Assembly: GCF_000143415.4 (NCBI RefSeq)
Contig: NW_003314304.1
Location: 1,292,841 to 1,356,840, forward strand
DNA: 64,000 bases
DNA from: Selaginella moellendorffii
Lineage: Eukaryota > Plantae > Lycopodiophyta
Reading direction: 5' to 3'
This document shows positions 27,126 to 44,103 of this stretch, in pieces; the first letter of the stretch is position 1; each line of letters starts with the position of its first letter. Position numbers and translations under genes: made by a program. The notes beneath the pieces are model-generated. The model worked only from the letters and a program-made list of their open reading frames with translations, searched no databases and was not told where the DNA came from.

Positions 27126-27995
27126 ATGGCCGCCAGTGCTACCAATGCTTTCAATGGCACTGCCTGGCGGAGCGTCCGCTCGAGCATTCGCTACTGGGCC
27201 GCGGAGCACCCGCCGGTTGCCAGATTCCGATGGGACTTCAACACCTTCGGTGCGTCGTGGACGTTCCTGGTCGCCTCCGTGCCGCTCTACCTCTCGCTCG
27301 TCCTGCTGCTCAAGCTCCTGCTCAGCTTCCGCAAGAGGCCGGTTCCATTGGGTCCGGTGCCAGTGCTGCACAACATGGTTCTCGTGGTGGGATCTGCGGC
27401 CATGTTTATCGGCTGCCTCCAAGCTACGGTGATTGAGATCCAGGAGAACAGGTGGCTATGGAACAAGAAGAAGGGGCTCAACTGGCTACTGTGCTTCCCG
27501 CTGGGGACGAGATCCGTGGGGAGGGTCTTCTTCTGGTCCTACGTTTACTACCTCAGCAAGTTCTACGAGCTGCTCGACACCGCTATCCTCATCCTCCGCA
27601 AGAAGCCGCTGACGTTCCTCCACGTCTTCCACCACTCGACCGTGATCGTGATGTGCTTCTTTTGGCTCCAGTTCACGCAGTCGCTCCAGGTGATCGCGCT
27701 GCTCACCAACACCGGCGTTCACGTCGCCATGTACACGTACTACTTGCTGTGCAGCCTCGGACTCCACCCGCCATGGAAGAAGATGGTGACCAACTTGCAG
27801 ATCTATCAGTTCCTCTTCAGCTTCGTGGTGTCGCTGGCGATGATGGTGCTCCATTTGGGGGGCGAGGGCTGTGCTGGGATCGGGGCTTGGTCCTTCAACT
27901 TTGGTTTCAACATCATCCTGCTCATGCTCTTCGCGAATTTCCACTCGCAGCAGTACGGGAATGCCAACGGCCAGGGAAAGAAGAAGAGGATGTAG
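27126..27995 (+). CDS. ELO/GNS1/SUR4-family fatty acid elongase (HOS3-like), intronless
   Basis: YYLSKFYELLDT, FLHVFHH His box, HVAMYTYY, C-terminal KKKRM. Confidence 0.93.
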   Translation: MAASATNAFNGTAWRSVRSSIRYWAAEHPPVARFRWDFNTFGASWTFLVASVPLYLSLVLLLKLLLSFRKRPVPLGPVPVLHNMVLVVGSAAMFIGCLQATVIEIQENRWLWNKKKGLNWLLCFPLGTRSVGRVFFWSYVYYLSKFYELLDTAILILRKKPLTFLHVFHHSTVIVMCFFWLQFTQSLQVIALLTNTGVHVAMYTYYLLCSLGLHPPWKKMVTNLQIYQFLFSFVVSLAMMVLHLGGEGCAGIGAWSFNFGFNIILLMLFANFHSQQYGNANGQGKKKRM

Positions 27996-28166: not shown

Positions 28167-30131
28167 ATGGTTTACGCAATAGCTTGCTCGTCACCTCTGC
28201 CTGGATCTAGTCTACCGCCTCGTAGCTTCGCTGATGGCACCCCCACGACTTTCCACCAGAACAAGATGATCGAAGCCTATGGAAAGTGTGGAAGGCTCGA
28301 GGATGCTCTCGACGTCTTCCACGCCATTCAAGACAAAGATTCCTTCTCCTGGAACCTAATGCTCGCTGCCTTGTGCCGCGCCGGGGAGCTCAAAAATGCC
28401 AGGGCCTTGCTGGATTTTATGCCAGAGAAAGATCTGGTGTCGTGGAACACGATGCTCGCGGCATACGCCCAAACTGGGCATCTTGGTCTAGCCGAGGAGA
28501 TCTTTGCCGCAATGCCGTTTTGGAGCCTGGCCACGTGGAATGCCATGCTGGCAGGGTACGCAGAGAACGACCAGCTGGACCAATCCCAGCGCGTCTTTCG
28601 GGCAATGCCGGAAAAGAATCTGGTAACGTGGACTGCCTTGGTCACAGCACTTGCCAGGAACGGGCATTTGGAGGATGCGGCGTCTGTGTTTGGAAATATG
28701 CCAGTACGGAACGTGGTGTCGTGGAACGTTATGCTCTCTGCGTACGGACAGAACTGGCAGTTGGAAAAGGCCCAGGCCGTGTTTAACAAAATGCCCGAGA
28801 GGAGTTGCAAGAGCTTCAATGCGATGCTCTCGGCATATGCCGTGTATGGGCATATGGAAGAGTCGAAAGCGTTGTTTGATGGTATGCCACAGAGAGACAT
28901 TGTGAGCTGGAATGTCCTGATTGCGGCGTATGCTCAGAATGGTTACGTTCTTCGTGCTCGAGAGATGTTTGAAAAGATGCCCGAGAGGAATCTTGTGTCG
29001 TGGAATTCCATGGTCTCTCTTTATGCCGACGCTGGAAAAATCCAAGAAGCGGAGGCTTTTCTCGATAGCATGAGCGAAAGAAACGTAGTTTCGTTTAACG
29101 CGTTGCTTTCAGCATATGCCCAGAACGGGCAACTTTTGCGAGCCAAGGACCTGTTTCGGGAAATGCCGTACCACAGCATGGTGTCGTGGAACGCCGTACT
29201 GTCCGGGCATGCACAAGACGGAAGGCTTGACGACGTGGTCTCCCTGTTTCGTATTATGCCGTACAACAACCACGTGTCGTGGAATGTCCTCGCGACGGCA
29301 AACGCCATACAGGGAAATCTCGAAGAGACAAAGAGAATCTTCGATGGAATGCCACAGCATGATCCGTACTCTTGGAATCTAATGTTGTCGGCTTTCGGGG
29401 AGAAAGGCTATCTGGAAGACGCGAAAAGAGTTTTTTACGCGATGCCAGTGAGGAACACAGTGTCGCTGTGCGCGATGATCTCTGCATATGCCCGAAATGG
29501 GCATCTTCACCAGGCAAAGGAGTTGTACGAAACCATGCCGAGGAAAAGCCTCTTTGCGTCTTGCTCCATTGTCACTGCTCACGTCGAGAATGGACACCTC
29601 GAAACAGCGGCAAAGATCTTCGATGCGATGCCCGATAACGATGATCCGGTTGCCTATGCAGCGCTGCTTGGAGCTTACGCTCAAAATGGACACTCGACTC
29701 AAGCGTTCCAGCTCTTCCACCGGATAAGTTTGATCGACTCACACTCACACCAGCAAGCGAATCTCACGTCGATTCTCATCGCTTGCACGCACAAAGGCAA
29801 GCCGATCCTTGGGAGGAACTGGTTTGCGTCGATGAGACAAGACTATGGCGTGGAGGCCACCAAGCAGCACTATTGCTGCATGGTCGACTTGCTCGCTCGA
29901 GCTGGATACCTGGATGATGCCAGGGATTTAATCGGTACCATGCCGTATGTTCCAGACATCTGGGAATGGACGAGCTTCCTCGGATCTTGCAGAAGTTACC
30001 GAGTCCATCGTCACGGAGCTTTTGCTGCAAAGAACTTGCTACATGGATCAAACTGGAGCGACGAGGCTCCGAGTTATCTCCTGCTCGCAAGCGTGATCGG
30101 AGGTGACAGTGGAGGAAATCATGATACTTAA
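28167..30131 (+). CDS. PLS-class (SS-rich) PPR-E protein
   Basis: Tandem 31-aa repeats MPE(K/R)NLVSWN.M..AYAQNG, then HYCCMVDLLARAG and an E domain. Confidence 0.92.
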   Translation: MVYAIACSSPLPGSSLPPRSFADGTPTTFHQNKMIEAYGKCGRLEDALDVFHAIQDKDSFSWNLMLAALCRAGELKNARALLDFMPEKDLVSWNTMLAAYAQTGHLGLAEEIFAAMPFWSLATWNAMLAGYAENDQLDQSQRVFRAMPEKNLVTWTALVTALARNGHLEDAASVFGNMPVRNVVSWNVMLSAYGQNWQLEKAQAVFNKMPERSCKSFNAMLSAYAVYGHMEESKALFDGMPQRDIVSWNVLIAAYAQNGYVLRAREMFEKMPERNLVSWNSMVSLYADAGKIQEAEAFLDSMSERNVVSFNALLSAYAQNGQLLRAKDLFREMPYHSMVSWNAVLSGHAQDGRLDDVVSLFRIMPYNNHVSWNVLATANAIQGNLEETKRIFDGMPQHDPYSWNLMLSAFGEKGYLEDAKRVFYAMPVRNTVSLCAMISAYARNGHLHQAKELYETMPRKSLFASCSIVTAHVENGHLETAAKIFDAMPDNDDPVAYAALLGAYAQNGHSTQAFQLFHRISLIDSHSHQQANLTSILIACTHKGKPILGRNWFASMRQDYGVEATKQHYCCMVDLLARAGYLDDARDLIGTMPYVPDIWEWTSFLGSCRSYRVHRHGAFAAKNLLHGSNWSDEAPSYLLLASVIGGDSGGNHDT

Positions 30132-31744
30132 CCGTGATCGTCTCCACGAGACGAGGTGATGTTTCTAGCCATCACGTAAGCTCTCGAGTTTTGTGGATCC
30201 AGCTCGATCAACCGCTGGGCTGCGAGATAGGCACGGTCTTGGTCACCGTGGAATCGGCTGGCACCAAGAACACACGTCCACTCGAGAACGTCCGCTACAA
30301 AGGGCATGGTTTCGACGAGCTCCACAGCCGAAGCCAAGTGACCAGAGCGGGCAAGCAAGTCGACCACGCAACAGTAGTGTTGTTTCGTGGGAGTGAGACC
30401 AAAATCCGTGACCATGGAGACGAAGTGGCACATTCCATCGTAGAGTTTTCCTCCGTGGTTGCAAACTGGAAGAACTAACGCGAAGGAAACTTGGTCTGGA
30501 AGTTGAGTGAGCCTTTGCAAGTGGAAGACGTGAAGAGCATCGTCAAGGAAGCCATTGTGGTGGTAAGCTGCGACCATTGCACTGTGAAGAACAACGTCGG
30601 GGTCTGGGCTTTCATCAAAGATCTGTCTCGCCTGTTGGATCTTTCCGTGCCGAGCATAAGTGACCAGCATTGTCGTCCATGACACTGTATTCTTGTAGGG
30701 GATTTCAAGCAAGGTTTTCTTGGCATTGTGGATACATCTCGCCTGAGCAAACGCTGCTAGCAAGCAGTTCCATGAGATGGTGTCTCGAACGGGCATTTCC
30801 CGAAACATTTGCTGGGTCTCCTCAAGATATCCGTTTTGAGAGTACGCAGTGAGCATCGAGTTCCAGGAGAGAGCGTTTCTTTCCGGCATAATTTCGAAAA
30901 CTCTTTTGGATTTGGAGACAATGTGATGTAAAACATAGGCATTCAGCATTGAGTTCATGGTGACAAGGTCGCGCTCGGGCATGCTAAAGAAGATAGTCTC
31001 AGCTTTATTAATATGCCCATCTTGGGCAAATGCTGCAATGACGGTGTTCCACGAAGTTATATCTCTTTCGGGCATTTCGTACAGCATTTTTTCTAAATTA
31101 TATTGTAAAAATGACGATGCAAAACAATCTAACATAGAATTGTAAGAAACTATGTTTCTCTGAGGCATATCACAAAAAGCCTTCCATGCTTTGTCCCTAT
31201 GCCCGTTTCGGGCATAGGCTCCTAACAAAGACGTCCACGAGATAACGTCGCGCTCGGGCATCTCAATAAACAGACCATCTAATTGATCCACATTCTGGCA
31301 AAAGGCTGCGAGCATTGAGTTCCAGAGGATCAAATCCCTGAGAGGAGCCTCATCAAACAACCTCTTTGCGTCATCAAGATACCCAGAATGGGCATATGCA
31401 ACGAGCAAAGTTGTCACGACCATCAGAGTTTTAACCGGCAGCGAATCAAAGAAGCCCTTGGCATCCTCAATTTTGTCGTTTCTGGTGTAGACGATGAGCA
31501 TCTGGTAAGAGGTGTGATCACTTACCACTGCCATGGATTCATAGACTGATCTAGCATCACCGACGCTGCCACATCTTCCAAACATGTCGATGAGCCTGTC
31601 ATGCACAAATGCATCGTCACGTCCAAGACAAGATTGGAGACTGGTGTAGATCTTCGTGGCTGCTCTAAGGCTGGAGCATGATTCTATGAGCTCCAAGCAA
31701 GCACTTCTGCTAAAATCCTTCATTCCGCTACAAAGGACTTGCAT
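30128..31744 (-). CDS. PLS-class (SS-rich) PPR-E protein
   Basis: MPERD..SW repeats, HYCCVVDLLARSG, EWTCVLGASR, AYVMARNI. Confidence 0.92.
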   Translation of the reverse strand: MQVLCSGMKDFSRSACLELIESCSSLRAATKIYTSLQSCLGRDDAFVHDRLIDMFGRCGSVGDARSVYESMAVVSDHTSYQMLIVYTRNDKIEDAKGFFDSLPVKTLMVVTTLLVAYAHSGYLDDAKRLFDEAPLRDLILWNSMLAAFCQNVDQLDGLFIEMPERDVISWTSLLGAYARNGHRDKAWKAFCDMPQRNIVSYNSMLDCFASSFLQYNLEKMLYEMPERDITSWNTVIAAFAQDGHINKAETIFFSMPERDLVTMNSMLNAYVLHHIVSKSKRVFEIMPERNALSWNSMLTAYSQNGYLEETQQMFREMPVRDTISWNCLLAAFAQARCIHNAKKTLLEIPYKNTVSWTTMLVTYARHGKIQQARQIFDESPDPDVVLHSAMVAAYHHNGFLDDALHVFHLQRLTQLPDQVSFALVLPVCNHGGKLYDGMCHFVSMVTDFGLTPTKQHYCCVVDLLARSGHLASAVELVETMPFVADVLEWTCVLGASRFHGDQDRAYLAAQRLIELDPQNSRAYVMARNITSSRGDDHG

Positions 31745-31820: not shown

Positions 31821-33338
31821 TTAATGCATTTTTGCTGCCGCTTTTTGAGCCAGATACAAGCTTGCCAAGCGAGGAGACTCGATTCCTCTTGGCTCAATGA
31901 ATCCTAGAGTCTCATTCCCAGTGCTTCCCAGCGATTGTATCGTGTTTCCAATGGCCCAGTTTGCTGCTTGTGGAGGTTTCACAACTTCCAACACTTTGGT
32001 GTGACAGTTCCACACAACACTAAATCCAGAAGTATAGCCATGATGTTTGTATGGCCTATTGCGCAGGCTGATCGTCCCATTTTCAAACTTCATGCTGTCA
32101 TACAGGATCCCAGTTGCAAAATGAGCGTGAGGCTCCGCGTGTGAGCTCCCATATGCGGTGCTGTTAAAGAAAACATTTGGACCATTTGCTTGGTCCCGGG
32201 TCATGTAGCTGAACTGGGAGCTTCCTCCTTGGATGACGCTGTTCTTGACGAGGATCTGGGAGCCTGGAAAGGCAATGGCGAGATCAGCAAATTTTGGACC
32301 TTTCATCGGGCCCGGAATAGTCCGGATGAGATTCAAGCCCTCGACTGTGATCCTCTTTCCAGTGACAGTCATGGTATCGCCTCCAAAGTCGACAGCCACG
32401 ACATTTCTCACCCAAGAGTCCTCCACCTGAGCGATGTTGAGAAAGGTGCCACGGCCGACAGGGAGAACTTTGTCCTGGACAGCCTTGAAGTTCTCGAGAC
32501 CGACGTGGGATACTCGTCCAGAGATCTCCACCTTGACCAAATAAGCCGGCTGTGACGAGCTCAGGTACCTGAGATCAACACGAAATGGAACCGGGATGTC
32601 GAGAAACACCATGTTCTTTTCGCCGTTAACTCTGGAAACTCTGCGCTCGATGGAAGTAACCGCAAAGTTTCCCCATCTCTCGCTCATATTCATCATCTGG
32701 ATCCACCTGGAAGTCATCGGCCAGACGATCGAGACGAGATCGCCGGGTTTGAATCCACAAGACGAGTCGAGCTTCACATAGTTAGAACCGGAGGGAACAG
32801 TCTCGACAATAGCAGCTCTGTGACCAACCTCTGTGATGGTTTGCTGTGGACTCTCGACTGAGAACAAAGCGTGGACGTCCATGCCATCCTCGGCTATGGA
32901 AACATTTGCGTGGAGGATGGTTTCGCTACTGCTGCTCCCGGTGATGAGAATTCCACTGGTGTTGATGGTGAAGTGGTGGCCTCGAACGTCGAAATTTCCA
33001 CTTGAGAGCTGGATTGCTCCCCGGAAACCTGTGCAGGGATCGAGTGGCAAGGAGGAGAGCTCGTTGATGGCATGCTGGATGGATTCACCGTCGCTCTTGT
33101 TGGTGTCTTTACAGTTGCGAGCAGGATAGAGGACAACTTTCACTGGTACCTCTGGCAGTTTGGCATCTCTTCCCAAGTATCCCACCGACGAAAAATCCAT
33201 GATCGTGTCACCTGCATTGGTGGGTTTGTAGACGAGTTTGCTGGTGTTGGCGTCAAGAGATACCCAGTAGATTGGAACGCCTTGAGTTACATGTAGGCAA
33301 GAAAATATTGCGATCATGAAGAGCACAGAAAGAGCCAT
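31821..33338 (-). CDS. Secreted parallel beta-helix (pectate-lyase-like) protein, bacterial-like, paralog A (probable chimera)
   Basis: Signal peptide MALSVLFMIAIFSCLHVTQG from the ATG at 33338, then DFSSVGYLG, IQHAINE...GFRGAIQL, GPNVFFNS, PHAHFATGILYD, WNC, PPQAANWAIG. Intronless. Confidence 0.8.
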   Translation of the reverse strand: MALSVLFMIAIFSCLHVTQGVPIYWVSLDANTSKLVYKPTNAGDTIMDFSSVGYLGRDAKLPEVPVKVVLYPARNCKDTNKSDGESIQHAINELSSLPLDPCTGFRGAIQLSSGNFDVRGHHFTINTSGILITGSSSSETILHANVSIAEDGMDVHALFSVESPQQTITEVGHRAAIVETVPSGSNYVKLDSSCGFKPGDLVSIVWPMTSRWIQMMNMSERWGNFAVTSIERRVSRVNGEKNMVFLDIPVPFRVDLRYLSSSQPAYLVKVEISGRVSHVGLENFKAVQDKVLPVGRGTFLNIAQVEDSWVRNVVAVDFGGDTMTVTGKRITVEGLNLIRTIPGPMKGPKFADLAIAFPGSQILVKNSVIQGGSSQFSYMTRDQANGPNVFFNSTAYGSSHAEPHAHFATGILYDSMKFENGTISLRNRPYKHHGYTSGFSVVWNCHTKVLEVVKPPQAANWAIGNTIQSLGSTGNETLGFIEPRGIESPRLASLYLAQKAAAKMH

Positions 33339-33499
33339 TTTTGCTCGAGCTTCCCTGATTTTTTCTCTTTGATTCATAGTTCGTACAGGAAATGATATAG
33401 TCACTCTTGCTTTGGACTTTAGCCTGGAACTAATGACAACGTCATGTCTGATGAAAAGATCGAGACAAAATGCAGGCCAAGTGAGAAAGACTTTTAACT

Positions 33500-33580
33500 T
33501 AACCATCATTTTCAAAGTGATGAAACCTCGTCGTACATGTGGAATAATTTTCCTCTTGGAGATTCTGGAAATGGATTGTG
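33500..33580 (-). pseudogene. DYW-domain C-terminal relic
   Basis: ISRISKRKII followed, after a frameshift, by RFHHFENDG. Matches 41320-41352. Confidence 0.7.
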
Positions 33581-33623
33581 TCGTGGAATGCTCTGGACCA
33601 AACTGGCAATTGAAAAGGCTTAA

Positions 33624-33700
33624 TCTTGGGCAAATGCTGCAATGACGGTGTTCCATGATGTTCTATCCTGTTCGGGCATTTTGTAAACCATTACTTCTAA
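33624..33700 (-). pseudogene. Short PPR fragment related to 31020-31097
   Basis: tcttgggcaaatgctgcaatgacggtgttcca is identical to 31020 onward. Confidence 0.75.
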
Positions 33701-33808
33701 ATAGAGGACGAATCATGGCATCTCGCGAGGTCCAGAAAAGAAATCTTGATTAATAATCTGATTATTAGCTGAAGGCTATAAACACGATCACTAACACCAG
33801 CTATTTAC

Positions 33809-33878
33809 TATTAGTAATGGGATTCAAACCCATGCCCTTGCAGACTAGTACCTGAAACTAGAGGCTTAGATCAACTCG
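33809..33878 (-). pseudogene. tRNA-Leu(CAG) pseudogene, 5'-truncated
   Basis: Minus strand CGAGTTGATCTAAGCCTCTAGTTTCAGGTACTAGTCTGCAAGGGCATGGGTTTGAATCCCATT follows the plant tRNA-Leu(CAG) pattern, with TTC>TTT in the T-loop and the 5' acceptor strand missing. Confidence 0.8.
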
Positions 33879-33965
33879 AAATTGTACAAATGCATTTTCA
33901 CATCCAAGGTTTATCATTGTTAGCACTTGATTGAAACCAATTTCTTTGTAAACTGACTATGCCTA

Positions 33966-35322
33966 CAGTGGATAAAGTGTAAGAAAACCAACTATGTCTA
34001 CTATGGACAGTGATTATTGAACATTTTATTTGATCTAATTGAATTATAAATTTATCATTTGGTAAATTGATTAATCAATTCATGAGCTTATATTCATGAG
34101 TTGATTTATCACTTCATGATGTTTCTGGGTTGCCTATATTTAAAATTTTGAACTAAATATAGTTATTAATATATCTAGCTATTTTTCTTATTTTAAAATT
34201 AACTAATATCAATATCAAGTATTGAACCTTAATTCTACTGTAAAAACCTAAATAAAACCACTTATTCATAGGGGTTTAAATATAAAGGGAAAGGGTTTAT
34301 AGAAAAAAATTAATCTTTTCTAATGCATTGTGCAGAAATGACAATCTAATGGACAGTCTAGATATTATAGCATCGTTGCTTGATACTCACTTGGAATTTA
34401 AAATTGAAAAAGAGAATTCAAAGCTCAGATAGGCTAAAAATATTTGGAAGATTTTGCATGATCAATGAGTTCCTTCCACTTCCATGACTAATATCCAGCT
34501 GCATCACAACAAAAGAAGACTATGAACTTGAAAGTCAAATTAAAAGATATTTAGGGTTAAGTGTATTAATTTTAAATAGTATTGGGTTGAGTTACGATAC
34601 TTGAGGTTAAATGTTCTTAAATTTGAATAGTGACCTCTTAAGAAGTATAAATTTAAGAATTTACACTACTAAGATGTGAATGCAACCTATAAAAGCCTTA
34701 AGGAAAGAATACTAGCCAGAAAAAAAAGCACCATAAAGCAAGATATTTATATGAAATGTTACAAGCCTTAAACCAACTCCTCTCTACACTCTAAATATTA
34801 AACACAACATCCCAGCCACAAATGCTTAATTGCAAGTCACTTTAAGCATTATTAAAGATCCTTTCACACCACCTAACCACCTCACCTCCAAACCTTATAC
34901 CATGAGTTTTTTTGTTTCCTAACATTAAATAACACAACTATATCACTCTATAGCCATCTTGGATGTAATGTTTATTACATTCTACACACCTATTTGATGT
35001 TATCTTTTGCATGCCTAAAGGTTGAAGTCTTGCTTTACTTCTTCAGCCCTTTATAGAACCTTCACCATCATACTTGGAAACTTAACCAAAGTGAAGTAGT
35101 TGGTCTAATAATTCTCCAGTATTTTAAACTCTATGATTTATAATAAATTCACCAATAAACTATTATGATCAATCAACTATTGAATTGATGAAACAAATCA
35201 TCAATTATCAAAGCATTCATTGATCAATTAAATCATGAACTGATCAATCAACTCATGATTTGATCAATTTATAATTCAATTTAACTATAATTGATCAATA
35301 ATCAAGCACACTTTTTCCACTA
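33966..35322. mobile_element. Non-autonomous TIR DNA transposon, Tc1/mariner-pogo-like, with TA target-site duplication
   Basis: TA|CAGTGGATAAAGTGT ... ACACTTTTTCCACTA|TA. Imperfect inverted homology continues about 150 bp (aattgaattataaatt, tcatgagttgatt.atca.ttcatgat). No transposase ORF. Confidence 0.7.
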
Positions 35323-37422
35323 TAGCCTTCTTTACTGGATAATTCAGCAAGATGGCTTGGTGTTGCAAAATGTTTAAGAGTGTGTTCATTCACACATTGG
35401 CAATTTCATTTTTAGACAGCTGAATTTCTTATTGAAAAGCTGATAGATAACACTTGAATCAGTTGTAACTTATCATGTCATGATACAAGCCTGCCAAGAA
35501 TTGCGGGACTTGTTTGGGTTGGGCAGAATTAGGTACCCAGGCGAAAAATGGGCCCCTTGCCCTAGTGGGCTTGCAAGAGTTTTGTAAACTCTAGAACCAA
35601 GATGGAGATCTTAGTACAAACAAAGCAAGTGAAGATTGAAAGGCTTCGGAATGCACTTCTTGCTTGCTGTGGAACTATGGATACAATCCTTCAGGAGGAG
35701 GAAGAGGAAGAGGCGGAATCCAGCCGGCACTCTTCGGCAGACGAGAGCTCCGATGACGAGGTACGAATGGTGCTTAATACCAGTGGATTCTTTTGCACAG
35801 GAGAACCACTACGCAAGTTTTGCTCAATGCTCAGTGCTTGGGCCCTGGGGCTGAGCTAGAAGTGAGAAAGTTGTGGATCTCTGCTTGTGAGCATTTGTTT
35901 TGAACAGCAACAACAACTGACCAGTTGTTTTGAAGTGCAAAGAACAATGTCCCTTCATTGTATGCAACAGTTTGTTTTAGAAATTCATCACATCTGGCAA
36001 ATGCATAGTTTAACTACAAGACTTCACAATTGTATCTTTCACCAACCAATCCACTCTAATCTTCATAGGTATTACTTTATTCTCTTCTTTTCCTTCTGTT
36101 GAATCACTTTTAGTTCTTGTTCAACAACAAAAGCATTTGTAGATTGTGGTGGCTTCTTCACATCTTGCCCAGAAACATCTTATAATGATGGCACAACACG
36201 CTGGACAATGGCCTTCCTCATGCCTCAAGTCTTATGCTAAACCTCCCAAGGTTGTGATCTTGTGAGAGAAATGATACCAATCAAATTAATTGCTATGGCA
36301 AGTTTCACCTGCGGAAGTATCTCCACAGTTATAAGTACCATTGGCTGCTTGGATAAAAAATGTCAATGGGGAACTCTAGATGTGTGATTGGCTTGGATTG
36401 GTCTTTAGAGTTTAGTTCTGTTAGGTTGATTTTATGTATACTGTTCTAGAAGGAATAGGCCAGATTACTTGACATATGAGAAAAAATTGGTATGTAAGGA
36501 TATGTCAATATGGTCATTACCCTTAATTTATTAACTTAAGTTTTGAAGAATTTTCGTAAGTTTAAAACTTAACCCCCTGTTTACCTTAAAGTGTTTTGAT
36601 TCATACTTTAACAAACCCTTGTTGAATCAAGTCTCCCCCTCTAACTCCCATCTTTCAAGCTCCAAAGCCCCACAATTCATGTGGGATTTTGATTGGTCCC
36701 AGAATTTTTCACAAGTTTTCGCAGAATTTCTCGTGGCACAGTGCAAAGATCCTTCATGGGTCATCAAGCACTAGAAGAACATTTAGGTGTGAGATTGGAA
36801 CCACGATAGAGAGCCAAAAACAGATCTAGCGACTGGTGGAGGTCAATTTGAATGAGAGATCCCTTGATCTAGAGCTGATTGAAGCATGCTGAGTAAGAGA
36901 GAGTTGGATAGGTTGAGATCAAGTGGCAGTGCTAGATTTGCGCACTATCTTGCGTGATTAGCAGCCCAAATCTCCTTGCAGCAATCAAAGAGCTCTTAAT
37001 GGAATAATGGCAAGTTAAGTGACTTAACTTCTGTAGCTTCCTAAAATTTAAGGGTAAAGGTAAATATAAGGGATATACATAAGCATTGATACATAGCTTA
37101 AAGGTTTATGTGAAACCAAATTACTTAAACAATCACTTTTAACTTTAAGGGTAAGGGTCAGTGCAAAAAAGCCCTAATACCAAAGTAATATTATACTCAT
37201 AGTTAGGCATACAATGGTCCAAATGTAGGTAGAGGGTTTGGCACTGGATGATAACCAAAACTTATCATCCAAAATTGTACTGAAAATATTGGACCAAAGA
37301 AGCATGCTTTCCATTGTGAACAACCTTATTAAGGAATTTGAAGTGATTTTTTGTTTTGACTAGTTTGATTTGATGTGGAAGTATTTTTTTAAATAACAAA
37401 ACTTTACAGTGGAACATTTTTG

Positions 37423-38958
37423 TTAGTTCTCATATTTTTGTTCAGAAGTTTCAATTTTTGCAGCTGCTTTTTGGGCCAAATACAGACTTGCCAAGCGATG
37501 AGACTCAATTCCTCTTGGCTCGATAAATCCTGGAGTCTCATCCCCAATGCTTCCCAGAGATTGAGTGGTGCCTCCAATGGCCCAGTTTGCTGCTTGTGGA
37601 GGTTTCACAACTTCCAACACCTTGGTGTGACAGTTCCACACAACACTATATCCAGAAGTGTAGCCGTGATCCTTGTATGGCCTGTTGATCAAGCTGATTG
37701 TCCCACTCTCAAACTTCATGTTATCATATAAGATCCCAGTTGCAAAGTGAGCGTGAGGCTCCGCAGGTGCGCTCCCATATCCAGTGCTGTTGAAGAAAAC
37801 GTTTGGACCATTCGCTTGATCGCGGGTCATGTAGATGAACTGAGTGCTTCCTCCTTCGATGATGCTGTTCTTGACGAGGATCTGGGAGCCTGGAAAGGCA
37901 ATGGCGAGATCAGCTGGTTTTGGACCATGCCTCGGGCCTGGAAGCGTCCGGATGAGATTCAAGCCCTCGACTGTGATCCTCTTTCCAGTGACAGTCATGG
38001 TATCTCCTCCAAAGTCGACAGCCACAACATTTCTCACCCAAGAGTCCTCCACCTGCGCGAGGCTGAGAAAGCTGCCACGACCGTAAGGGGGAACTTTGTC
38101 CTGGACAGCCTTAAAGTTCTCGAGACCGACTTGGGATACTCGTCCAGAGATCTCCACCTTGACCAAGTACGCCGGTTGTGACGAGCTCAGGTACTCTAGA
38201 TCAACACGAAATGGAACCGGGACGTCGAGAAATACCGTGTTTTTCTCGGCGTCAACCCTGATAACTCTGCGCTCGATGGACGTTTCCGCATAGTTCCCCC
38301 ATCTCTCGCTCATCTTCATCATCTGGATCCACTTGGAAGTCATCGGCCAGACGATCGAGACGAGATCGCCGGGTTTGAGTCCACTAGACGAGTCGAGCTT
38401 CACGTACCTAGAACCGGAAGGAACAGTCTCGACTATAGCAGCTCTGTGACCAACCTCTGAGATAGTCTGCTGTGGACTCTCGACCGAGAACAAAGCGTAG
38501 ACGTGCATGCCATCCTCGGCTATGGAGACATTTGCGTGGAGGATGGTTTCGCTACTGCTGCTGCCGGTGATGAGAATTCCACTCGCGTTGATGGTAAAGT
38601 GGTGGCCTCGAACGTCAAAAACTCCACTTGAGAGCTGGATTGCTCCTCGGAAGCCTGTGGAGGGATCGAGTGGCAAGGAGGAGACCTCGTCGATGGCTTG
38701 CTGGATGGCATCGCCATCGCTTTTGCTGCTGCCACCAGATCGAACGGGATAGAGAGTTCTTCTCACAGGCACGTTATCTGGGAGAGTTGCATCGCTGCCC
38801 AAGTATCCCACCGCTGAAAAATCCATGATAGTATCGCCTGCGCTGGTGGATTTGTAAACGAGCTTGTTGCCATTGTCACTGTCCAATGACACCCAATATG
38901 TGGGGGCACAAAAAACTGTAACACAACCAAAAACTAAAGTGAGCAAAAGAGTAAGCAT
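37423..38958 (-). CDS. Secreted parallel beta-helix (pectate-lyase-like) protein, paralog B
   Basis: 511-aa intronless ORF with signal peptide and the same motifs as paralog A. Confidence 0.82.
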   Translation of the reverse strand: MLTLLLTLVFGCVTVFCAPTYWVSLDSDNGNKLVYKSTSAGDTIMDFSAVGYLGSDATLPDNVPVRRTLYPVRSGGSSKSDGDAIQQAIDEVSSLPLDPSTGFRGAIQLSSGVFDVRGHHFTINASGILITGSSSSETILHANVSIAEDGMHVYALFSVESPQQTISEVGHRAAIVETVPSGSRYVKLDSSSGLKPGDLVSIVWPMTSKWIQMMKMSERWGNYAETSIERRVIRVDAEKNTVFLDVPVPFRVDLEYLSSSQPAYLVKVEISGRVSQVGLENFKAVQDKVPPYGRGSFLSLAQVEDSWVRNVVAVDFGGDTMTVTGKRITVEGLNLIRTLPGPRHGPKPADLAIAFPGSQILVKNSIIEGGSTQFIYMTRDQANGPNVFFNSTGYGSAPAEPHAHFATGILYDNMKFESGTISLINRPYKDHGYTSGYSVVWNCHTKVLEVVKPPQAANWAIGGTTQSLGSIGDETPGFIEPRGIESHRLASLYLAQKAAAKIETSEQKYEN

Positions 38959-39528
38959 GCTTGAGAGATTATATACTGCTCTAAACTATCAAAATCAGCC
39001 TACATTTTATAGTGGAAAACCACGACAAAATGTTATAAGAGAGTTTAATACGGCATGGCAAAGGTTGGAGAAAGAACATTTTCATTCTTTCAGGACAAAT
39101 TCAAGAGGATTCGAATCGATATCTGGAAACACCGTGAATCTTATACGTTGACCGGTCTTTGGCCGCGCAGATACATTGTCCTATCCTGGAATTATAAACC
39201 CTTCTACCGCATGTAAATAATTTCACATCTTGATTTGCATTGCTTCCTTGATTTTCCCATATGAAACTTTGGCCTTGTTCCTGTTACCAAAGAAGAGGAA
39301 GATTGCACTGAGAAGAATATGGACTTCGTGTCTGATTTTTTACACTGTCACTACAAATTTCTGACACTTACGCTTCCAATTATCTGGCGTTTATGTGGTT
39401 TTGCAAACCAACTCGGCATGCAAACGAGGTGTCCTAGAAACGTTTTTGTGTTGCTTATTCATCCTAGACATATGTTGAAAGTTTCAAAGGGTATATCCAT
39501 AAATTTGACGTGTATTGACTTTCTTTGC

Positions 39529-41067
39529 TCACATTTTTGCGACCTTTTTTTGAGCCAGGTACAAGCTTGTCAAACGATCAGACTCGATTCCTCCCGGCTC
39601 GATGAATCCCGGCGTTTCGTCTCCAATGCTTCCCAGCGATTTCGCGTTGCATCCAATCGCCCAGTTGGCCGCCTGTGGAGGATTGATCACCTTGAGCACC
39701 GTCGCGTTACAGTTCCATGCGACACTAAACCCGGATGTGTAGCCGTGAGTGATGGTCGCTCGATTCACCAGGCTCAGCGTTCCACCCACCAAGTTCATGT
39801 TGTCGTACAAGATCCCTGTCGCAAAGTGGCTGTGAGGTTCCGCTGGCGAGCTTCCATAGCCGGTGCTGTTGAAGAACACGTTGGGACCATTTGCCTGGTT
39901 CCTGGTGATGTAGCTAAACTGAAAATCTCCTCCCCGAATGACGCTGTTCTTTACGAGGATCTGTGAGCCTGGAAATTGGATGGCGAGATCTGCTCGTTTG
40001 GCGCCATACCTGTTGCTCTGGATGGTCCTCTCAAGGTGCAAGTTGTCGACGGTGACCTTCGTGCCGGCGATAGTAACAGTGTCTCCTCCAAAGTCCACAG
40101 CAGCGACGTTTCTCACCCACGAGTTCTCCACTCGCTGGATGTTGAGGAAGTTCCCGGCACCGTACGGAAGAACTTTGTCCTGGACTGCTTTAAAGTTCTC
40201 GAGACCAACGTGGCTTGTTCTTCCGGAGATGTTCACCTTGACCAAGTAGGCCGGCTGCGCGGTGCTCAGGTACGCTAGATCGATCCGGAAAGAAACTGGG
40301 ACGTCGAGGAAGACTCTGCTGCTCGCGTTGTCGATACTGGCGACTTTGCGTTCGATGTATGTTGACGAAGCATTCGACCACCTGTGCGTCATGTTCATGG
40401 TCTGGATCCACGCGGAGCTCATCGGCCAAACGATCCTCACGAGGTCCCCAGGATTGATGTCTCGAGTTGAGTTGAGCTGCACGAACCTGGATCCCGACGG
40501 CACTGTTGCTATGATCGCGGTTTTCGAGCCAATCTCCGAGACCTTTTCTTGCGGACTCTCCACAGAGAAAAGAGGATAGAAGTGGGGAAAGGTACTGTCA
40601 TCGCCGTCGACGCGGGAAACGCTTGCCTGGAGAATTGTTTCTTCGCTGCTGCTACCGGTGATGACAATTCCACTGGTGTTGATGGTAAAGCGGTGGCCTC
40701 GAACATCAAAGACTCCACTCGAAAGCTGGATTGCTCCACGGTAACCTGTAGAAAGATCCAGAGGCAAGGAAGAAACCTCATTGATGGCCTGCTGGATGGA
40801 TTCACCATCGCTCTTGTTGCTGCCTTTGTAGTTGCGAGCAGGATAGAGGGCAACTTTCACTGGTATGTTGTCTGGCAGTGCGGCATCCCTTCCCAAGTAT
40901 CCCACGGCCGAAAAATCCATGATTGTGTCACCTGCATTGGTGGGTTTGTAGACGAGTTTGCTGGTGTTGGCCTCAAGTGACACCCAGTAGATTGGAACGC
41001 CTTGAATTACATCTAGACAAGAAAATCTTACAATGATGAGTAGCAGCAAGAGCGCAGGAAGAGTCAT
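39529..41067 (-). CDS. Secreted parallel beta-helix (pectate-lyase-like) protein, paralog C
   Basis: 512-aa intronless ORF with signal peptide and the same motifs. Confidence 0.82.
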   Translation of the reverse strand: MTLPALLLLLIIVRFSCLDVIQGVPIYWVSLEANTSKLVYKPTNAGDTIMDFSAVGYLGRDAALPDNIPVKVALYPARNYKGSNKSDGESIQQAINEVSSLPLDLSTGYRGAIQLSSGVFDVRGHRFTINTSGIVITGSSSEETILQASVSRVDGDDSTFPHFYPLFSVESPQEKVSEIGSKTAIIATVPSGSRFVQLNSTRDINPGDLVRIVWPMSSAWIQTMNMTHRWSNASSTYIERKVASIDNASSRVFLDVPVSFRIDLAYLSTAQPAYLVKVNISGRTSHVGLENFKAVQDKVLPYGAGNFLNIQRVENSWVRNVAAVDFGGDTVTIAGTKVTVDNLHLERTIQSNRYGAKRADLAIQFPGSQILVKNSVIRGGDFQFSYITRNQANGPNVFFNSTGYGSSPAEPHSHFATGILYDNMNLVGGTLSLVNRATITHGYTSGFSVAWNCNATVLKVINPPQAANWAIGCNAKSLGSIGDETPGFIEPGGIESDRLTSLYLAQKKVAKM

Positions 41068-41310
41068 TTTTTGCTTGAAAAATTAGAGCTTTTGTTTGAT
41101 AATTTCGTCATGATTTATCTTTTTCTCAATGTCGGGTAGTTCCTTTGGACTCTAGCCTGGAACCAATTTCTACGTCAATAATGTATGATGGGACGAATAC
41201 TTTGCCCACGATCTAGTGTCTAGTGAACGTAAAAATCTGGAAAATTACTTGGCATTGAAATTAGATGCCTCTAAACTTATCAGTAGCCTTTGCAGCAGCA
41301 AGTAAAGTGA

Positions 41311-43783
41311 TCAATCACACAAAATAATCTTCCTCTTGGAAATCCTGGAAATGCACCTGAAACAAGTGTGACAATCCAAAGAAACTCTCAAGTTCTTCAT
41401 TACCCGGATGGTCGTCCCTGGCACAGTGCTGATCAATCCAAACGCAATCACCGACTTCTCGCTGTGATGCTTGACCATCTCTTCCTTTTGCTCCTGGCTG
41501 ACGTCGTGAAGAACACCGGTGGTATAAGGAACACATCCCAAATGATCACGCATCTCGCGTATCAACCTCTGCAAGAGTGAGAATCATCCCGCGACACGAA
41601 CTCGTGCACAGCATCGCCTACATAGATATTAGAAACCATCACAAACGGACCAGCACTCACCGATTCCGGAGCCACCTCGCGGAAGCTCTCCGCTACCCGA
41701 GGGCCTCTCTCAATGCTGCCCTGTGTCTTACAGTACACTTCATCTCGTGTATCAATCTCTGTAACTCCACCACAAGAATCATCCCGCGACACAAACTCGT
41801 GAAAAGCCATACATATTAGAAACCATCACAAACGGACCAGCACTCACCGATTCCGGAGCCACCTCGCGGAAGCTCTCCGCTACCCGAGGGCCTCTCTCAA
41901 TGCTGCCCTGTGTCTTACAGTACACTTCATCTCGTGTATCAATCTCTGTAACTCCACCACAAGAATCATCCCGCGACACAAACTCGTGAAAAGCCATACA
42001 TATTAGAAACCATCACAAACGGACCAGCACTCACCGATTCCGGAGCCACCTCGCGGATGCTCTCCGCTGCCCGAGAGCCCCTCTCGATGCTGCCGTGCGT
42101 CTTACAAGCTCCCAAGAAGAGCACCCACGCTACCGAGTCCGGCTCAAAGGGCATGTTGTTCAAGAGATCCTCGGCCTCGTCCAGCTTCCCGGCTCGCCCA
42201 AGCGCATCCACCATGCACCTATAGTGCGTCAACCTGGGGTTCTTCATCTCCACAAAGTTGTCGTAGGCCTCGTCCACGAGCCCAGCGTGGCTACACGTAG
42301 ACAAGAGCGTTCCATAAGTCACCTCGTTGGGCATCACCCCATCGAGAGCCATCCTCCGGAAGAGCTCCAGCGATTCTTCGCAGTGGCCGTGCTGGGAGTA
42401 AGCAGCGATGATCGACGTCCAGGCCACCACATTCTTCCTTTCCATGCTCTCAAACACCTCCCTTGCCTCGTCCAAGCCAGCACACTTCCCATACATGTAC
42501 ATGAGCGCTGTCTGGATCAAGAGGTCTCTGGCGAGCCCATAGTCGATGATACTGGCGTGGATTCTTCGTCCCTGGCCCAAGGCCGTGAGATTGGCGCTGG
42601 CTTCCAGCAAGCTAAGGAACGTCATGTTGTTGGATTCCAGTCCCTCTTCTTGCATCTCTCGGTAGAGCTCTAGCGCCTCTCGATAGAAGCCATTCTGTGC
42701 CAGGGTCGTGATCATCACGCTGCAGGAGATCGCTGTCCTGGGAGCGATGGAATCGAAGACTTGTCTGGCCTCTTCCACGCTGCCACACTTGGAGTACATG
42801 TTGACCAGGCTGTTCTTGAGAGATTCGTCCGTATGGAAGCCACTGGCAATGGCGCGACGGTGAAAGAGCCTCCCGGTACCGAGATTTCCCTGCCAGGAGC
42901 AAGAACAAGCCTCGATCAGTGCCAGGAATGTGATCTTGTTCGCTTGGAACGTACCTTCCAGCTCCAAGAGCCGAAATACCGCGATCGCGTCGGCGCCTCG
43001 GCCGTGCTGCGCGTAGGCCTCGATCATCGCGTTCCAGGAGACGATATTTCGGGCGGGCATGGCATCGAAGACCTCCCTGGCGCTGGCTATGGCGCCACAT
43101 CGCGCGTACGCGCTCACCACGGCCGTGGCGACGAGGACGTCGCGATCCATTCCAGCGGCAGTGATCTTCTCGACGATCGATCGCGCCTGGGCGAGGAGCT
43201 CCGGGGCGGCGCATGCCGATAGAGCATTCAAGAACGTAACCCTAGTGGCCTTGATACCGTGTAGCTCCATTTTCTTGAGGAGCTCCAGTGCCGCCATGGA
43301 TTGCCCATTCATGGCATTTGCTCCAATCCAGATGTTCCAGGAGAATACATTCTTCTCGTGGATCTCTTGGAACGCCGCGGCCGCCTCATCCAATCGCCCA
43401 CACCGTCCATACATATCCACCACGAGATTGCCAAGAAATCGGTCGTGTTCCAGCCGCATCGATCGAATGTGAGCGTGGACGAGCTTGCCCGCCGCGAGGG
43501 CATTGAGTCTGCCACATTCTTGGAGGAGCCAGGAGTAAGTCGAGAATTCGGCACGGGCGCCAGGCAGGAGATTGATCCTCACGGCATCGTGAAGCTCACG
43601 AATGCGAGGACGCGGCTCCCGGATCAAGGGCAGCGCGGGCTGATCAAATACGGCAGCTCCGCATTTGAGATCTTTCCCTCCAGGAGCTCCTGGAACAGAG
43701 AAGGGCATGGCTAGAACAATGGGTTTCTTCGATTGATCGAGATCTCGCAAGTGTAGCCTCGTGTGTAGGGCAGAAGAAGCCAT
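41311..43783 (-). pseudogene. PLS-E-DYW PPR gene: PPR part open (41966-43783), DYW part disconnected and degenerate
   Basis: The 605-aa PLS ORF stops inside a 187-bp repeat. Downstream: G.VP.T..VLHDV..EQKE....HHSEK, KNLRVSLDCH, and a stop after KIILCD. Confidence 0.8.
41582..42110. repeat. 187-bp tandem repeat, about 3 copies
   Basis: agaaaccatcacaaacgg recurs at 41631, 41818 and 42005. Confidence 0.92.
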
Positions 43784-44103
43784 TGAGCGGCGCTACTGCT
43801 GGAAATCAGAGGCGACTTCGCTGTGGGCATCAGTAAAGCACAGAGCGAAACCATTGATCGCTAGCGCTAGTTGCGATGCCAAGAATCGAGAGTATGAGCT
43901 TCCTGTAGTAGGGCAAAAGCACTGGAGCTCGCGATCGTCCCGTGAAGGAAGAACTACGGTTGTCTGGCCGCTGGACCATTGGTCCTTTGGATCTAGGAAC
44001 GAGCCACAGGGATGCGCGCTTAGGCGCCGCGCGGCACCCTCGCAGAGAGCATCGTTCCCAAGAACCCTAGATCCAATGGTGGAATTTAAAGCAACACCAG
44101 ACC

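What the first reader, a model, noticed from the sequence alone, without database searches (positions are those of the whole stretch)
31821..41067. Tandem trio of intronless, secreted, bacterial-looking beta-helix proteins: horizontal transfer candidate
Seen in sequence: three intact 505-512 aa paralogs with signal peptides and several N-x-S/T sequons. Their motif string (DFS.VGYLG..LP..PV, IQ.AI.EVSSLP.D..GFRGAI.L, GR.S.VG.EN, VEDSWVRNV, GPNVFFN, PH..ATGILYD, HG...G.SV.WNC, PP.AANWAIG) matches from memory an uncharacterised pectate-lyase-superfamily group of soil bacteria and some fungi. It is unlike plant PL1, GH28 or PME families. The genes sit among clear plant genes and share flanking relics with them, which argues against contamination. 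Inference: an acquired and amplified apoplastic polysaccharide-degrading or defence system.
Basis: partly seen in the sequence, partly recalled or inferred. Interest (0 to 1): 0.85.

Follow-up and report, generated by a model that had tools for sequence, protein, structure and literature searches.

The report
Bacterial-type beta-helix genes in spikemoss
The spikemoss Selaginella moellendorffii carries three intact tandem genes for a secreted sugar-polymer-enzyme-like protein whose relatives are almost all bacterial; clubmosses and a whisk fern share the gene, so it most likely entered early vascular plants from bacteria.

Summary
Three intact, intronless minus-strand genes of 505, 511 and 512 aa sit inside a plant PPR-gene cluster of Selaginella moellendorffii. 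They have hydrophobic signal-like N-termini and 3-10 N-glycosylation sequons.

- **Selection and expression:** dN/dS is 0.19-0.28. Gene 3 is transcribed without splicing. Gene 1 is a gene-conversion mosaic of the gene 3 and gene 2 types.
- **Fold:** the AlphaFold model (pLDDT 92) is a right-handed beta-helix. It matches no Pfam, NCBIfam or solved family by sequence.
- **Family:** it is large and uncharacterised (2296 hits), and the named or context-checked members are mostly bacterial. Many members carry carbohydrate-binding modules or type IX secretion tails.
- **Plant members:** only Selaginella (two loci), Diphasiastrum (two loci) and a Psilotum transcript.
- **Phylogeny:** the plants form one clade (100/99) nested among bacterial sequences. 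Agreement with the species tree is not rejected (AU p 0.27).

Horizontal transfer is therefore supported, but it is ancient. It happened at or before the lycophyte-fern split, with loss in seed plants, rather than recently in Selaginella. The donor lineage is unresolved. The family also occurs in giant viruses, a fungus and an amoeba transcriptome. Enzymatic function (glycan hydrolase or lyase) is inferred, not shown.

The parts
31821..33338 (-). Gene 1: 505-aa secreted-type beta-helix protein (database protein P0001; its other-haplotype allele is SELMODRAFT_431084)
   Evidence: ORF. The translation equals P0001. It carries 8 sequons and has dN/dS 0.28 against gene 2.
33050..33338 (-). Gene-conversion or recombination tract. 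The first ~290 nt of the gene 1 coding sequence (signal peptide to about residue 95) are of the gene 3 type. The rest of gene 1 is of the gene 2 type.
   Evidence: families D4 and D6: gene 1 vs gene 3 is 84-90%, gene 1 vs gene 2 is 61-76%. sliding identity: gene 1 vs gene 3 is 0.88-0.93 over the first ~290 nt, then gene 1 vs gene 2 is 0.85-0.95.
33623..33702 (-). Fragment of a PPR motif about 285 nt upstream of the gene 1 start codon, copied from the neighbouring PPR gene
   Evidence: family D7: 86% identical to 31019-31098. Read by eye, it encodes MVYKMPEQDRTSWNTVIAAFAQD. This is nearly identical to the misannotated N-terminus of the other-haplotype model P0119 (MVYRMPEQDRTSWNTVIAAFA), shown.
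37423..38958 (-). Gene 2: 511-aa paralogue, intact, with no RNA coverage in the four runs laid
   Evidence: Depth is zero. This is the protein modelled by AlphaFold.
39529..41067 (-). Gene 3: 512-aa paralogue, the most divergent of the three (68% to gene 2). It is transcribed and unspliced.
   Evidence: In one search, raw RNA-seq reads and contigs cover about 39494-40982 only. The first mate lies on the + strand (on - in only two bins of run X20), there are no joints, and the adjoining DNA has zero depth.
30128..31744 (-). Flanking PPR (E-motif) gene, showing plant chromosomal context
   Evidence: Pfam PPR E = 4e-57.
41966..43783 (-). Flanking PPR gene on the other side of the trio
   Evidence: Pfam PPR E = 1e-58.

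Best explanation
The three genes are functional Selaginella moellendorffii nuclear genes for a secreted, N-glycosylated right-handed beta-helix protein. The protein belongs to a large, uncharacterised, mainly bacterial family of modular extracellular carbohydrate-active-type proteins.

The plant lineage acquired one copy by horizontal transfer from a bacterium, probably a soil bacterium, at or before the common ancestor of lycophytes and ferns. The gene then gained a eukaryotic signal peptide and sequons. It was kept in Selaginellales, Lycopodiales and at least Psilotum, and was lost in seed plants and in the other sampled plants. In Selaginella it later duplicated in tandem, with gene conversion between copies.

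Inferred mechanism: the protein is exported to the apoplast and binds a polysaccharide along the beta-helix groove. It cleaves that polysaccharide by hydrolysis or beta-elimination, using the family-invariant polar residues that the trio retains (E280, H402, D412, R426 and others, gene 2 numbering).

Shown here: gene integrity, purifying selection, transcription of gene 3, the fold, family membership and the phylogenetic position. Inferred: secretion, catalysis, substrate and biological role.
For: **Integration in plant DNA**
- The trio lies among six PPR genes plus ELO, TAXi-type protease, ankyrin-PGG and GDSL-lipase genes.
- A PPR relic sits upstream of gene 1.
- GC3 of 0.56-0.63 is like the neighbouring genes.
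- The second Selaginella locus also has PPR neighbours.
- The Diphasiastrum copies lie on 44-49 Mb chromosomes.

**Constraint and expression**
- dN/dS is 0.19-0.28.
- RNA-seq covers gene 3 only, with the first mate almost always on the + strand, as expected for a minus-strand RNA in most stranded libraries, and without joints.

**Family**
- The exhaustive HMMER search gives 2296 hits, 287 of them below 1e-30.
- Named hits are Chitinophagaceae, Mucilaginibacter, Paenibacillus, Planctomycetota, Polyangiaceae and similar.
- Bacterial gene contexts were confirmed for several members.
- Relatives are fused to CBM6/35/64, CBM32-type discoidin, CBM96, BACON, type IX secretion tails, a dockerin, a PL6 domain and a GH88/105 domain.

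**Fold**
- The model has pLDDT 92.4.
- The best structural match is the GH28 enzyme 1bhe at Z 28.4, and the list holds only beta-helix proteins.
- Full-length matches at TM 0.85-0.87 are all to bacterial Atlas clusters.

**Phylogeny**
- Plants are one clade: 100* and 100/99 in the careful tree.
- That clade is nested in starred bacterial sets.
- Plants score at least 736 bits against at most 374 bits for the best bacterium.
- A lycophyte-only clade is not rejected, AU p = 0.27.

**Distribution and catalytic residues**
- No other plant lineage appeared.
- The trio retains the family-invariant polar residues.
Against: - No member of the family has a known activity, and no substrate could be inferred from bacterial synteny.
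- Several positions conserved in at least 90% of bacterial members are changed in all plant copies (R131, Y178, R404, W405, W433). The plant stem branch is long (0.6-0.8), so function may have shifted.
- E280 is Q or S in the non-trio plant members.
- The Psilotum member is known only from a transcriptome, with no genomic context.
- The donor lineage is unresolved: support is 24-31 around the plant clade.
- The family also occurs in a fungus, an amoebozoan transcriptome and giant-virus contigs, so the route need not have been direct.
- Absence from other plants rests on the databases searched, which lack most 1KP transcriptomes.
- Expression of genes 1 and 2 was not shown.
Confidence: 0.7

Rival explanations
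1. Vertical descent. The family is an old eukaryotic or streptophyte gene that survives only in lycophytes and Psilotum after many independent losses. No transfer into plants occurred.
For: - The family is patchily present in other eukaryotes: a Mortierellomycota protein, an Ascomycota Atlas cluster and a Protostelium transcript.
- The plant subtree is compatible with the species tree.
Against: - Plants sit inside a well-supported bacterial subset (100* and 99*).
- The fungal sequence is far away, at path length 2.8.
- No alga, bryophyte or seed plant has it.
- P0003 and P0004 translate straight from the genomic DNA, gene 3 transcripts show no splice joint, and nearly all of P0122 lies in one ORF, though its annotated span is about 245 nt longer than its coding length.
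- This reading would need many independent losses.
Confidence: 0.08
2. Indirect transfer. The gene reached early vascular plants through a giant virus (Nucleocytoviricota) or another eukaryote rather than straight from a bacterium.
For: - P0202 lies next to an NCLDV major capsid gene on a contig with 20-27% GC.
- P0165 lies on a contig with ubiquitin, an HNH-AP2 endonuclease, dUTPase and many orphan ORFs.
- P0202 was sister to the plants at 75/89 in the 42-row tree.
- NCLDV-derived genes have been reported in Selaginella (PMC4083422).
Against: - Once its relatives are added, P0202 joins P0165, P0212 and P0251 (98*). The plant sister position then dissolves, with supports of 24-31.
- P0202 has a long branch and biased composition, so the earlier grouping looks like long-branch attraction.
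- No family member was found in IMG/VR.
- No viral hallmark gene lies near the trio.
Confidence: 0.1
3. The proteins are no longer enzymes. They serve as secreted glycan-binding or decoy proteins, a neofunctionalised beta-helix.
For: - Plant-wide substitutions occur at positions conserved in at least 90% of bacterial members.
- E280 is replaced by Q or S in four of the seven plant members.
- The plant stem branch is long.
Against: - The window trio itself keeps E280, H402, D412, R426, D46, D245 and N458.
- It evolves under purifying selection.
Confidence: 0.15
4. Bacterial contamination or misassembly, or a recent transfer specific to Selaginella.
For: The genes are intronless and have bacterial-like sequence.
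Against: - The genes lie inside a 1.66 Mb scaffold, between PPR genes, with a PPR relic alongside.
- A second haplotype allele exists.
- The genes have plant-like GC3.
- Plant RNA-seq shows expression.
- Orthologues at 37-48% identity exist in Diphasiastrum and Psilotum.
Confidence: 0.02

Closest known systems
Uncharacterised bacterial 'pectate lyase superfamily / discoidin domain-containing' proteins, e.g. Niastella vici A3860_09575 (P0021), Mucilaginibacter mali (P0019), Chitinophaga niabensis (P0033) and Paenibacillus sp. RC67 (P0040)
   Same: - They align over the full length at 30-35% identity with E down to 1e-62.
- The whole-protein predicted structure is the same, TM 0.85-0.87 over about 465 residues.
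- They share the invariant residues and the C-terminal SLY..Q helix.
   Different: - Plant copies lack CBM, BACON and type IX secretion modules.
- Plant copies have eukaryotic-type signal sequences and N-glycosylation sequons.
- Plant copies share derived substitutions at several otherwise conserved positions.
- None of the bacterial proteins has a known activity either.
GH28 polygalacturonases (Erwinia 1bhe; Arabidopsis PGLR 8ikx) and other pectin-lyase-fold enzymes
   Same: They share the right-handed parallel beta-helix core: Z 28.4 with 291 residues aligned at 2.6 A to 1bhe, and Z 24.6 to PGLR.
   Different: - There is no sequence relationship.
- Identity is only 8-11%.
- About 220 of the 511 residues lie outside the aligned core.
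- The family-invariant polar residues (E280, H402, D412, R426) are not the GH28 aspartate set recalled from memory, an inference.
- Many unrelated beta-helix families score nearly as well, so no family stands out.
Phage tailspike and capsule depolymerases and the Geobacillus virus E2 ORF18 'pectin lyase' (7chu, 9k4a, 7w1c, 4ru4)
   Same: - These are the best Foldseek E-values, 7e-10 to 5e-8.
- They give the only profile-to-PDB sequence hits: 7chu at E = 2e-8 over the N-terminal cap, and 9k4a at E = 1.7e-4 over profile positions 165-394.
   Different: - TM scores are low, 0.23-0.38.
- There is no trimerisation or virion-binding part.
- In the 9k4a alignment the conserved GxEN glutamate has no matching glutamate in the phage protein (read by eye).
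Known microbe-to-plant transfers of secreted carbohydrate-active genes, e.g. bacterial GH8 in Trebouxiophyceae and the fern Tma12 LPMO (reviewed in PMC12448838; PMC6786969)
   Same: The event is of the same kind. A microbial extracellular glycan-active gene is integrated, expressed and kept in a restricted plant lineage.
   Different: - The protein family is different and uncharacterised.
- The recipients are different: lycophytes plus Psilotum.
- I found no paper that mentions these genes.
- The Ma et al. 2022 catalogue could not be read.

Membership tests
Right-handed parallel beta-helix (pectin-lyase-like) fold superfamily | Coiled three-sheet right-handed beta-helix core | tested here: met
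   The AlphaFold model has pLDDT 92.4 and pTM 0.92. All 50 top VIA matches are beta-helix proteins, at Z 19.7-28.4.
Pfam PF12708 (Pect-lyase_RHGA_epim; GH55 and tailspike-type N-terminal region) | Score above the Pfam gathering cut-off of 27 bits | tested here: not met
   The plant proteins give no hit at E <= 0.1. Bacterial relatives give N-terminal hits of 20-37 bits, and 22-86% of members in some Atlas clusters carry the family. The relationship is distant at most and confined to the cap region.
Plant pectin enzymes PL1 (PF00544), GH28 (PF00295) and PME (PF01095) | Match to the family HMM | tested here: not met
   There are no Pfam hits and no PDB sequence hits. Only fold-level similarity exists.
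The uncharacterised bacterial beta-helix family (no Pfam, NCBIfam or, to my knowledge, CAZy name) | Full-length homology with the shared invariant residues (D46, S48, Q86, R104, R230, H402, D412, R426, N458, C-terminal SLY..Q) | tested here: met
Bacterium-to-plant horizontal gene transfer | The gene is physically integrated in host chromosomal DNA and is not a contaminant | tested here: met
   PPR flanks and a PPR relic, a second haplotype, and chromosomal loci in Diphasiastrum.
Bacterium-to-plant horizontal gene transfer | Recipient sequences form a clade nested within donor-domain sequences with strong support | tested here: met
   The plant clade has 100/99 support. It is nested in bacterial sets at 100* and 99*. 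The root is not inferred, and the immediate sister is unresolved.
Bacterium-to-plant horizontal gene transfer | Absence from the recipient's wider relatives (algae, bryophytes, seed plants) | tested here: inconclusive
   None were found in a 15-billion-protein collection. Word-based searches missed known members (P0122, P0003). Most fern and lycophyte transcriptomes are not in these databases.
Glycoside hydrolase or polysaccharide lyase (enzyme) | Demonstrated cleavage of a glycan, with identified catalytic residues | not testable with these tools
   Only indirect evidence exists: fusion partners (CBMs, PL6, GH88/105) and conserved acidic, His and Arg residues.

The most novel reading that the evidence does not exclude
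These genes may represent a new carbohydrate-active enzyme family with plant members. An early vascular plant could have captured it through a giant-virus intermediate, since members of the family sit on NCLDV-like contigs. Lycophytes would then have kept it as an apoplastic enzyme that degrades microbial exopolysaccharide or cell wall, which would be an ancient defence lost in seed plants.
Probability: 0.08. Interest if true: 0.8.

Novelty: new member of a known kind. Interest (0 to 1): 0.5.

Why it matters
If the reading holds, it adds a well-supported and very old (at least about 400 My) bacterium-to-plant transfer of a secreted glycan-active-type gene. The gene survived in lycophytes and a whisk fern and was lost in seed plants. 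It bears on how early vascular plants borrowed extracellular enzymes from soil microbes.

It also flags a large protein family that has no Pfam, CAZy or PDB representative. That family has 2296 hits at E <= 0.001, 287 of them below 1e-30, and includes members fused to CBMs, PL6 or GH88/105. The expressed plant copy (gene 3), a single-domain protein, would be a convenient target for first biochemical and structural characterisation.

The finding does not change a major concept. Microbe-to-plant transfers of this sort are already documented.

Tried and rejected
- **Family scans:** Pfam and NCBIfam scans of the plant proteins gave nothing usable.
- **PDB by sequence:** the single-sequence search gave nothing. 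The profile search hit only the N-terminal cap of 7chu and gave a weak 9k4a match.
- **Bacterial gene neighbourhoods:** Paenibacillus, Mucilaginibacter, Niastella and Chitinophaga showed no shared polysaccharide-utilisation locus and no substrate clue. The look-up for Niastella koreensis P0281 found no record.
- **Accessory-domain clue:** CBM96's founding member binds alginate (PMC9971899), but the domain occurs in unrelated contexts, so I treat it as a weak hint only.
- **Giant-virus sister hypothesis:** P0202 was sister to the plants in the 42-row tree. After its relatives were added, the grouping dissolved, so I rejected it as supported evidence.
- **Viral contig scans:** scans with P0202 and with the plant alignment found no relatives. 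The 66-sequence alignment was too divergent for that tool.
- **Literature:** searches for the locus tags, the DUF names and HGT catalogues found no mention. Maumus et al. 2014 list other Selaginella NCLDV-like genes, not these.
- **Unfinished tree:** the 76-row careful tree did not finish in time, so I used the quick tree and a finished 42-row careful tree.


Full report
**Observation.**
One search shows three long minus-strand ORFs at 31821-33656, 37423-38958 and 39529-41067. The first is a 611-codon maximal ORF, but its product from the Met at 33338 (505 aa) is identical to database protein P0001.

They are 68-83% identical to each other, and every quoted motif is present. Each starts with a hydrophobic core (mean hydropathy 2.6-3.0 over 12 residues) followed by small residues. 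They carry 8, 3 and 10 N-x-S/T sequons. Secretion and glycosylation are inferred from this, because no signal-peptide predictor was available.

Pairwise dN/dS is 0.19-0.28, with dS of 0.37 (gene 1 vs 2), 0.87 (gene 1 vs 3) and 1.14 (gene 2 vs 3). These are constrained genes and not chance ORFs.

**Genomic setting.**
The window is Selaginella moellendorffii. P0001 clusters at 90% or more with SELMODRAFT_431084, the allele on the other haplotype scaffold. Earlier notes of this scan name the same species.

The trio lies inside a cluster of six intronless PPR genes. An ELO elongase, a TAXi-type aspartyl protease, an ankyrin-PGG protein and a GDSL lipase lie nearby. GC3 of the trio (0.56-0.63) falls within the range of the neighbouring PPR genes (0.53-0.70).

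An 80-nt fragment at 33623-33702 is 86% identical to 31019-31098 inside the adjacent PPR gene. It encodes a PPR motif that the public gene model of the other haplotype wrongly fused to the N-terminus (P0119). Contamination or misassembly is excluded for practical purposes.

**Local evolution of the trio.**
Nucleotide similarity among the copies ends at the ORF boundaries. Gene 1 is a mosaic:
- The first ~290 nt of its coding sequence match gene 3 at 88-93% and gene 2 at only 41-78%.
- The remainder matches gene 2 at 85-95% and gene 3 at 60-80%.

This indicates gene conversion or unequal crossing-over between tandem copies.

**Expression.**
I laid two raw RNA-seq runs and two small contig sets of the same organism on 37300-41200. 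Reads and contigs cover about 39494-40982, which is gene 3 only. First mates lie on the + strand, apart from two bins of run X20 with some on -. That is the expected pattern for a minus-strand RNA in most stranded libraries. No splice joints were seen.

Depth is zero across gene 2 and the spacer. This serves as an internal control against DNA carry-over. So gene 3 is transcribed and unspliced, and gene 2 is silent in these samples. Gene 1 was not tested, because only one read-laying run is allowed.

**What the protein is.**
Pfam, NCBIfam and a PDB sequence search give nothing for the plant proteins. An AlphaFold model built from a 66-sequence alignment is confident (pLDDT 92.4, pTM 0.92).

The model is a right-handed parallel beta-helix. 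The best VIA match is the GH28 polygalacturonase 1bhe (Z 28.4, 291 residues, 2.6 A). Mannuronan epimerases, PL6/PL9/PL31 lyases, GH82, GH91 and many phage tailspikes score almost as well. Foldseek ranks phage depolymerases first, but with TM of only 0.23-0.38.

About 220 residues fall outside the aligned common core. They presumably include the N-terminal strands, a segment around residues 165-260 and the C-terminal helix. No solved family stands out. A profile search of the PDB hits only the N-terminal cap of Geobacillus virus E2 ORF18 (E = 2e-8) and, weakly, a Klebsiella phage K1 depolymerase (E = 1.7e-4).

In contrast, predicted structures of bacterial Atlas clusters match the whole protein (TM 0.85-0.87, about 465 residues).

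**The family.**
An exhaustive HMMER search of 1.84 billion cluster representatives finds 2296 proteins at E <= 0.001, of which 287 are at E <= 1e-30.

Named members are Chitinophagaceae (Niastella, Chitinophaga, Niabella), Mucilaginibacter, Paenibacillus, Planctomycetota, Polyangiaceae, Acidobacteriota-type clusters and others. Bacterial gene contexts were verified for several of them.

Many members are modular. They carry discoidin/CBM32-type domains, CBM6/35/64, CBM96, BACON, Ig-like domains, type IX secretion tails, a dockerin, a PL6 chondroitinase-B-type domain (P0132) or a GH88/105 domain (P0349). This is the signature of secreted polysaccharide-active enzymes. The PL6, GH88/105 and CBM96 partners hint weakly at uronic-acid polymers (CBM96 founder: PMC9971899).

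Bacterial neighbourhoods did not share a utilisation locus, so no substrate can be assigned. I found no characterised member and no paper on the associated DUFs.

**Conserved residues.**
One search examined 374 non-plant members. The near-invariant polar positions, in gene 2 numbering (numbers plus 4), include D46, S48, Y52, Q86, R104, D198, R230, D245, E280, H402, D412, R426, H431, N442 and N458.

The window trio keeps all of these. The other plant members have Q or S at E280. All plant copies share substitutions at several positions that are otherwise at least 90% conserved (R131, Y178, R404, W405, W433).

I therefore commit to a retained catalytic function for the trio. This would be a glycan hydrolase or lyase acting along the helix groove, probability about 0.65. 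A neofunctionalised binding protein is the main functional rival.

**Distribution in plants.**
Four searches recover only these plant members:
- the window trio;
- a second Selaginella locus (SELMODRAFT_407052/422454, 40% identity), which is intronless and also next to PPR genes;
- two Diphasiastrum complanatum genes on 44.8 and 49.3 Mb chromosomes (P0122 at 48% and P0004 at 37%);
- one Psilotum nudum transcript (46%).

With the plant profile, plant sequences score 736-849 bits and the best bacterium 374 bits. No seed plant, bryophyte, alga or other fern appeared.

One caveat applies. The word-seeded searches missed known members (P0122, P0003). The claim of absence therefore rests mainly on the exhaustive search, and on what that collection contains.

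**Phylogeny.**
- The plants form one clade in FastTree trees of 273 and 163 rows, at 100* in the 273-row tree.
- The same holds in a quick IQ-TREE LG+C20 tree of 76 rows (SH-aLRT 100, stem 0.8). There the clade is nested in bacterial sets supported at 100* and 99*.
- The finished careful tree of 42 rows gives the plant clade UFBoot/SH-aLRT of 100/99.
- Inside the plant clade, Psilotum joins the window trio (100/97), and the second Selaginella locus joins the two Diphasiastrum genes (95/57).
- Forcing all lycophyte copies into one clade is not rejected (AU p = 0.27), so simple vertical descent within vascular plants after one gain is acceptable.
- The only fungal sequence tested (Mortierellomycota P0114) is remote (path length 2.8).

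**Donor and route.**
The sister of the plant clade is unresolved. Two neighbours were unexpected.

P0153 comes from a Protostelium nocturnum transcriptome. It pairs with a bacterial sequence whose contig carries an atp operon.

P0202 lies directly downstream of an NCLDV major capsid gene (Capsid_N 100 bits, Capsid_NCLDV 80 bits, both above cut-off) on a contig of 20-27% GC. P0202 was sister to the plants at 75/89 in the 42-row tree. However, it has a long branch and biased composition. When its relatives P0165, P0212 and P0251 are added, it joins them (98*) and the link to the plants dissolves, with supports of 24-31.

P0165 lies on a contig with ubiquitin, an HNH-AP2 endonuclease, dUTPase and many orphan ORFs, which also looks like a giant virus.

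So giant viruses do carry this family. NCLDV-derived genes have been reported in Selaginella (PMC4083422; these genes are not among them). A viral route is not supported by the better-sampled tree, though it is not excluded.

**Verdict.**
The acquisition is ancient and shared with Lycopodiales and at least one fern, and the Selaginella trio is a later tandem amplification.

The functional label (apoplastic polysaccharide degradation or defence) remains a reasonable inference without direct support. I found no publication describing these genes. The large HGT catalogue of Ma et al. 2022 could not be read, so prior listing there cannot be excluded.

In kind this is a new member of a known class of event, microbe-to-plant transfer of a secreted glycan-active-type gene. 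It involves a protein family that is itself uncharacterised.

Noticed in passing
L010:46-2815 (Logan contig SRR14578319_49949): A member of this beta-helix family (P0202, 498 aa) is encoded directly downstream of an NCLDV major capsid protein gene on a contig with 20-27% GC. P0165, P0212 and P0251 form a clade with it. The P0165 contig (L011) has ubiquitin, an HNH-AP2 endonuclease and dUTPase. Giant viruses therefore appear to carry this family.
   Followed up: partly
P0153 (EukProt EP01117 Protostelium nocturnum transcript): An amoebozoan transcriptome holds a full-length family member that groups with a bacterial sequence near the plant clade. It could be a real amoeba gene, or it could come from prey or contaminant bacteria.
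   Followed up: no
window:41621-42181: There are three tandem copies of a 187-nt unit (99% and 66% identity to the first). They run into the 3' end of the PPR gene at 41966-43783.
   Followed up: no
window:33050-33338: The 5' part of gene 1 is a conversion tract of the gene 3 type in an otherwise gene 2 type copy. The upstream ORF extension to 33656 has no homology and is probably non-coding.
   Followed up: yes
window:20292-31744 and 41966-45606: Six intronless PPR genes are densely packed, and two of them overlap by 4 nt at their convergent ends (28167-30131 on + and 30128-31744 on -). An ELO elongase gene (27126-27995) lies among them.
   Followed up: partly
window:33700-37400: The 3.7 kb spacer between gene 1 and gene 2 is AT-rich (GC 0.34 at 34-36 kb) and has no ORF over 85 aa. 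It may be a degraded insertion that split the tandem array.
   Followed up: no
P0123, P0124 (metagenomic bacterial proteins): Some bacterial members hold two tandem copies of the whole ~500-aa beta-helix unit in one polypeptide. From memory, this recalls the two-helix layout of GH55.
   Followed up: no
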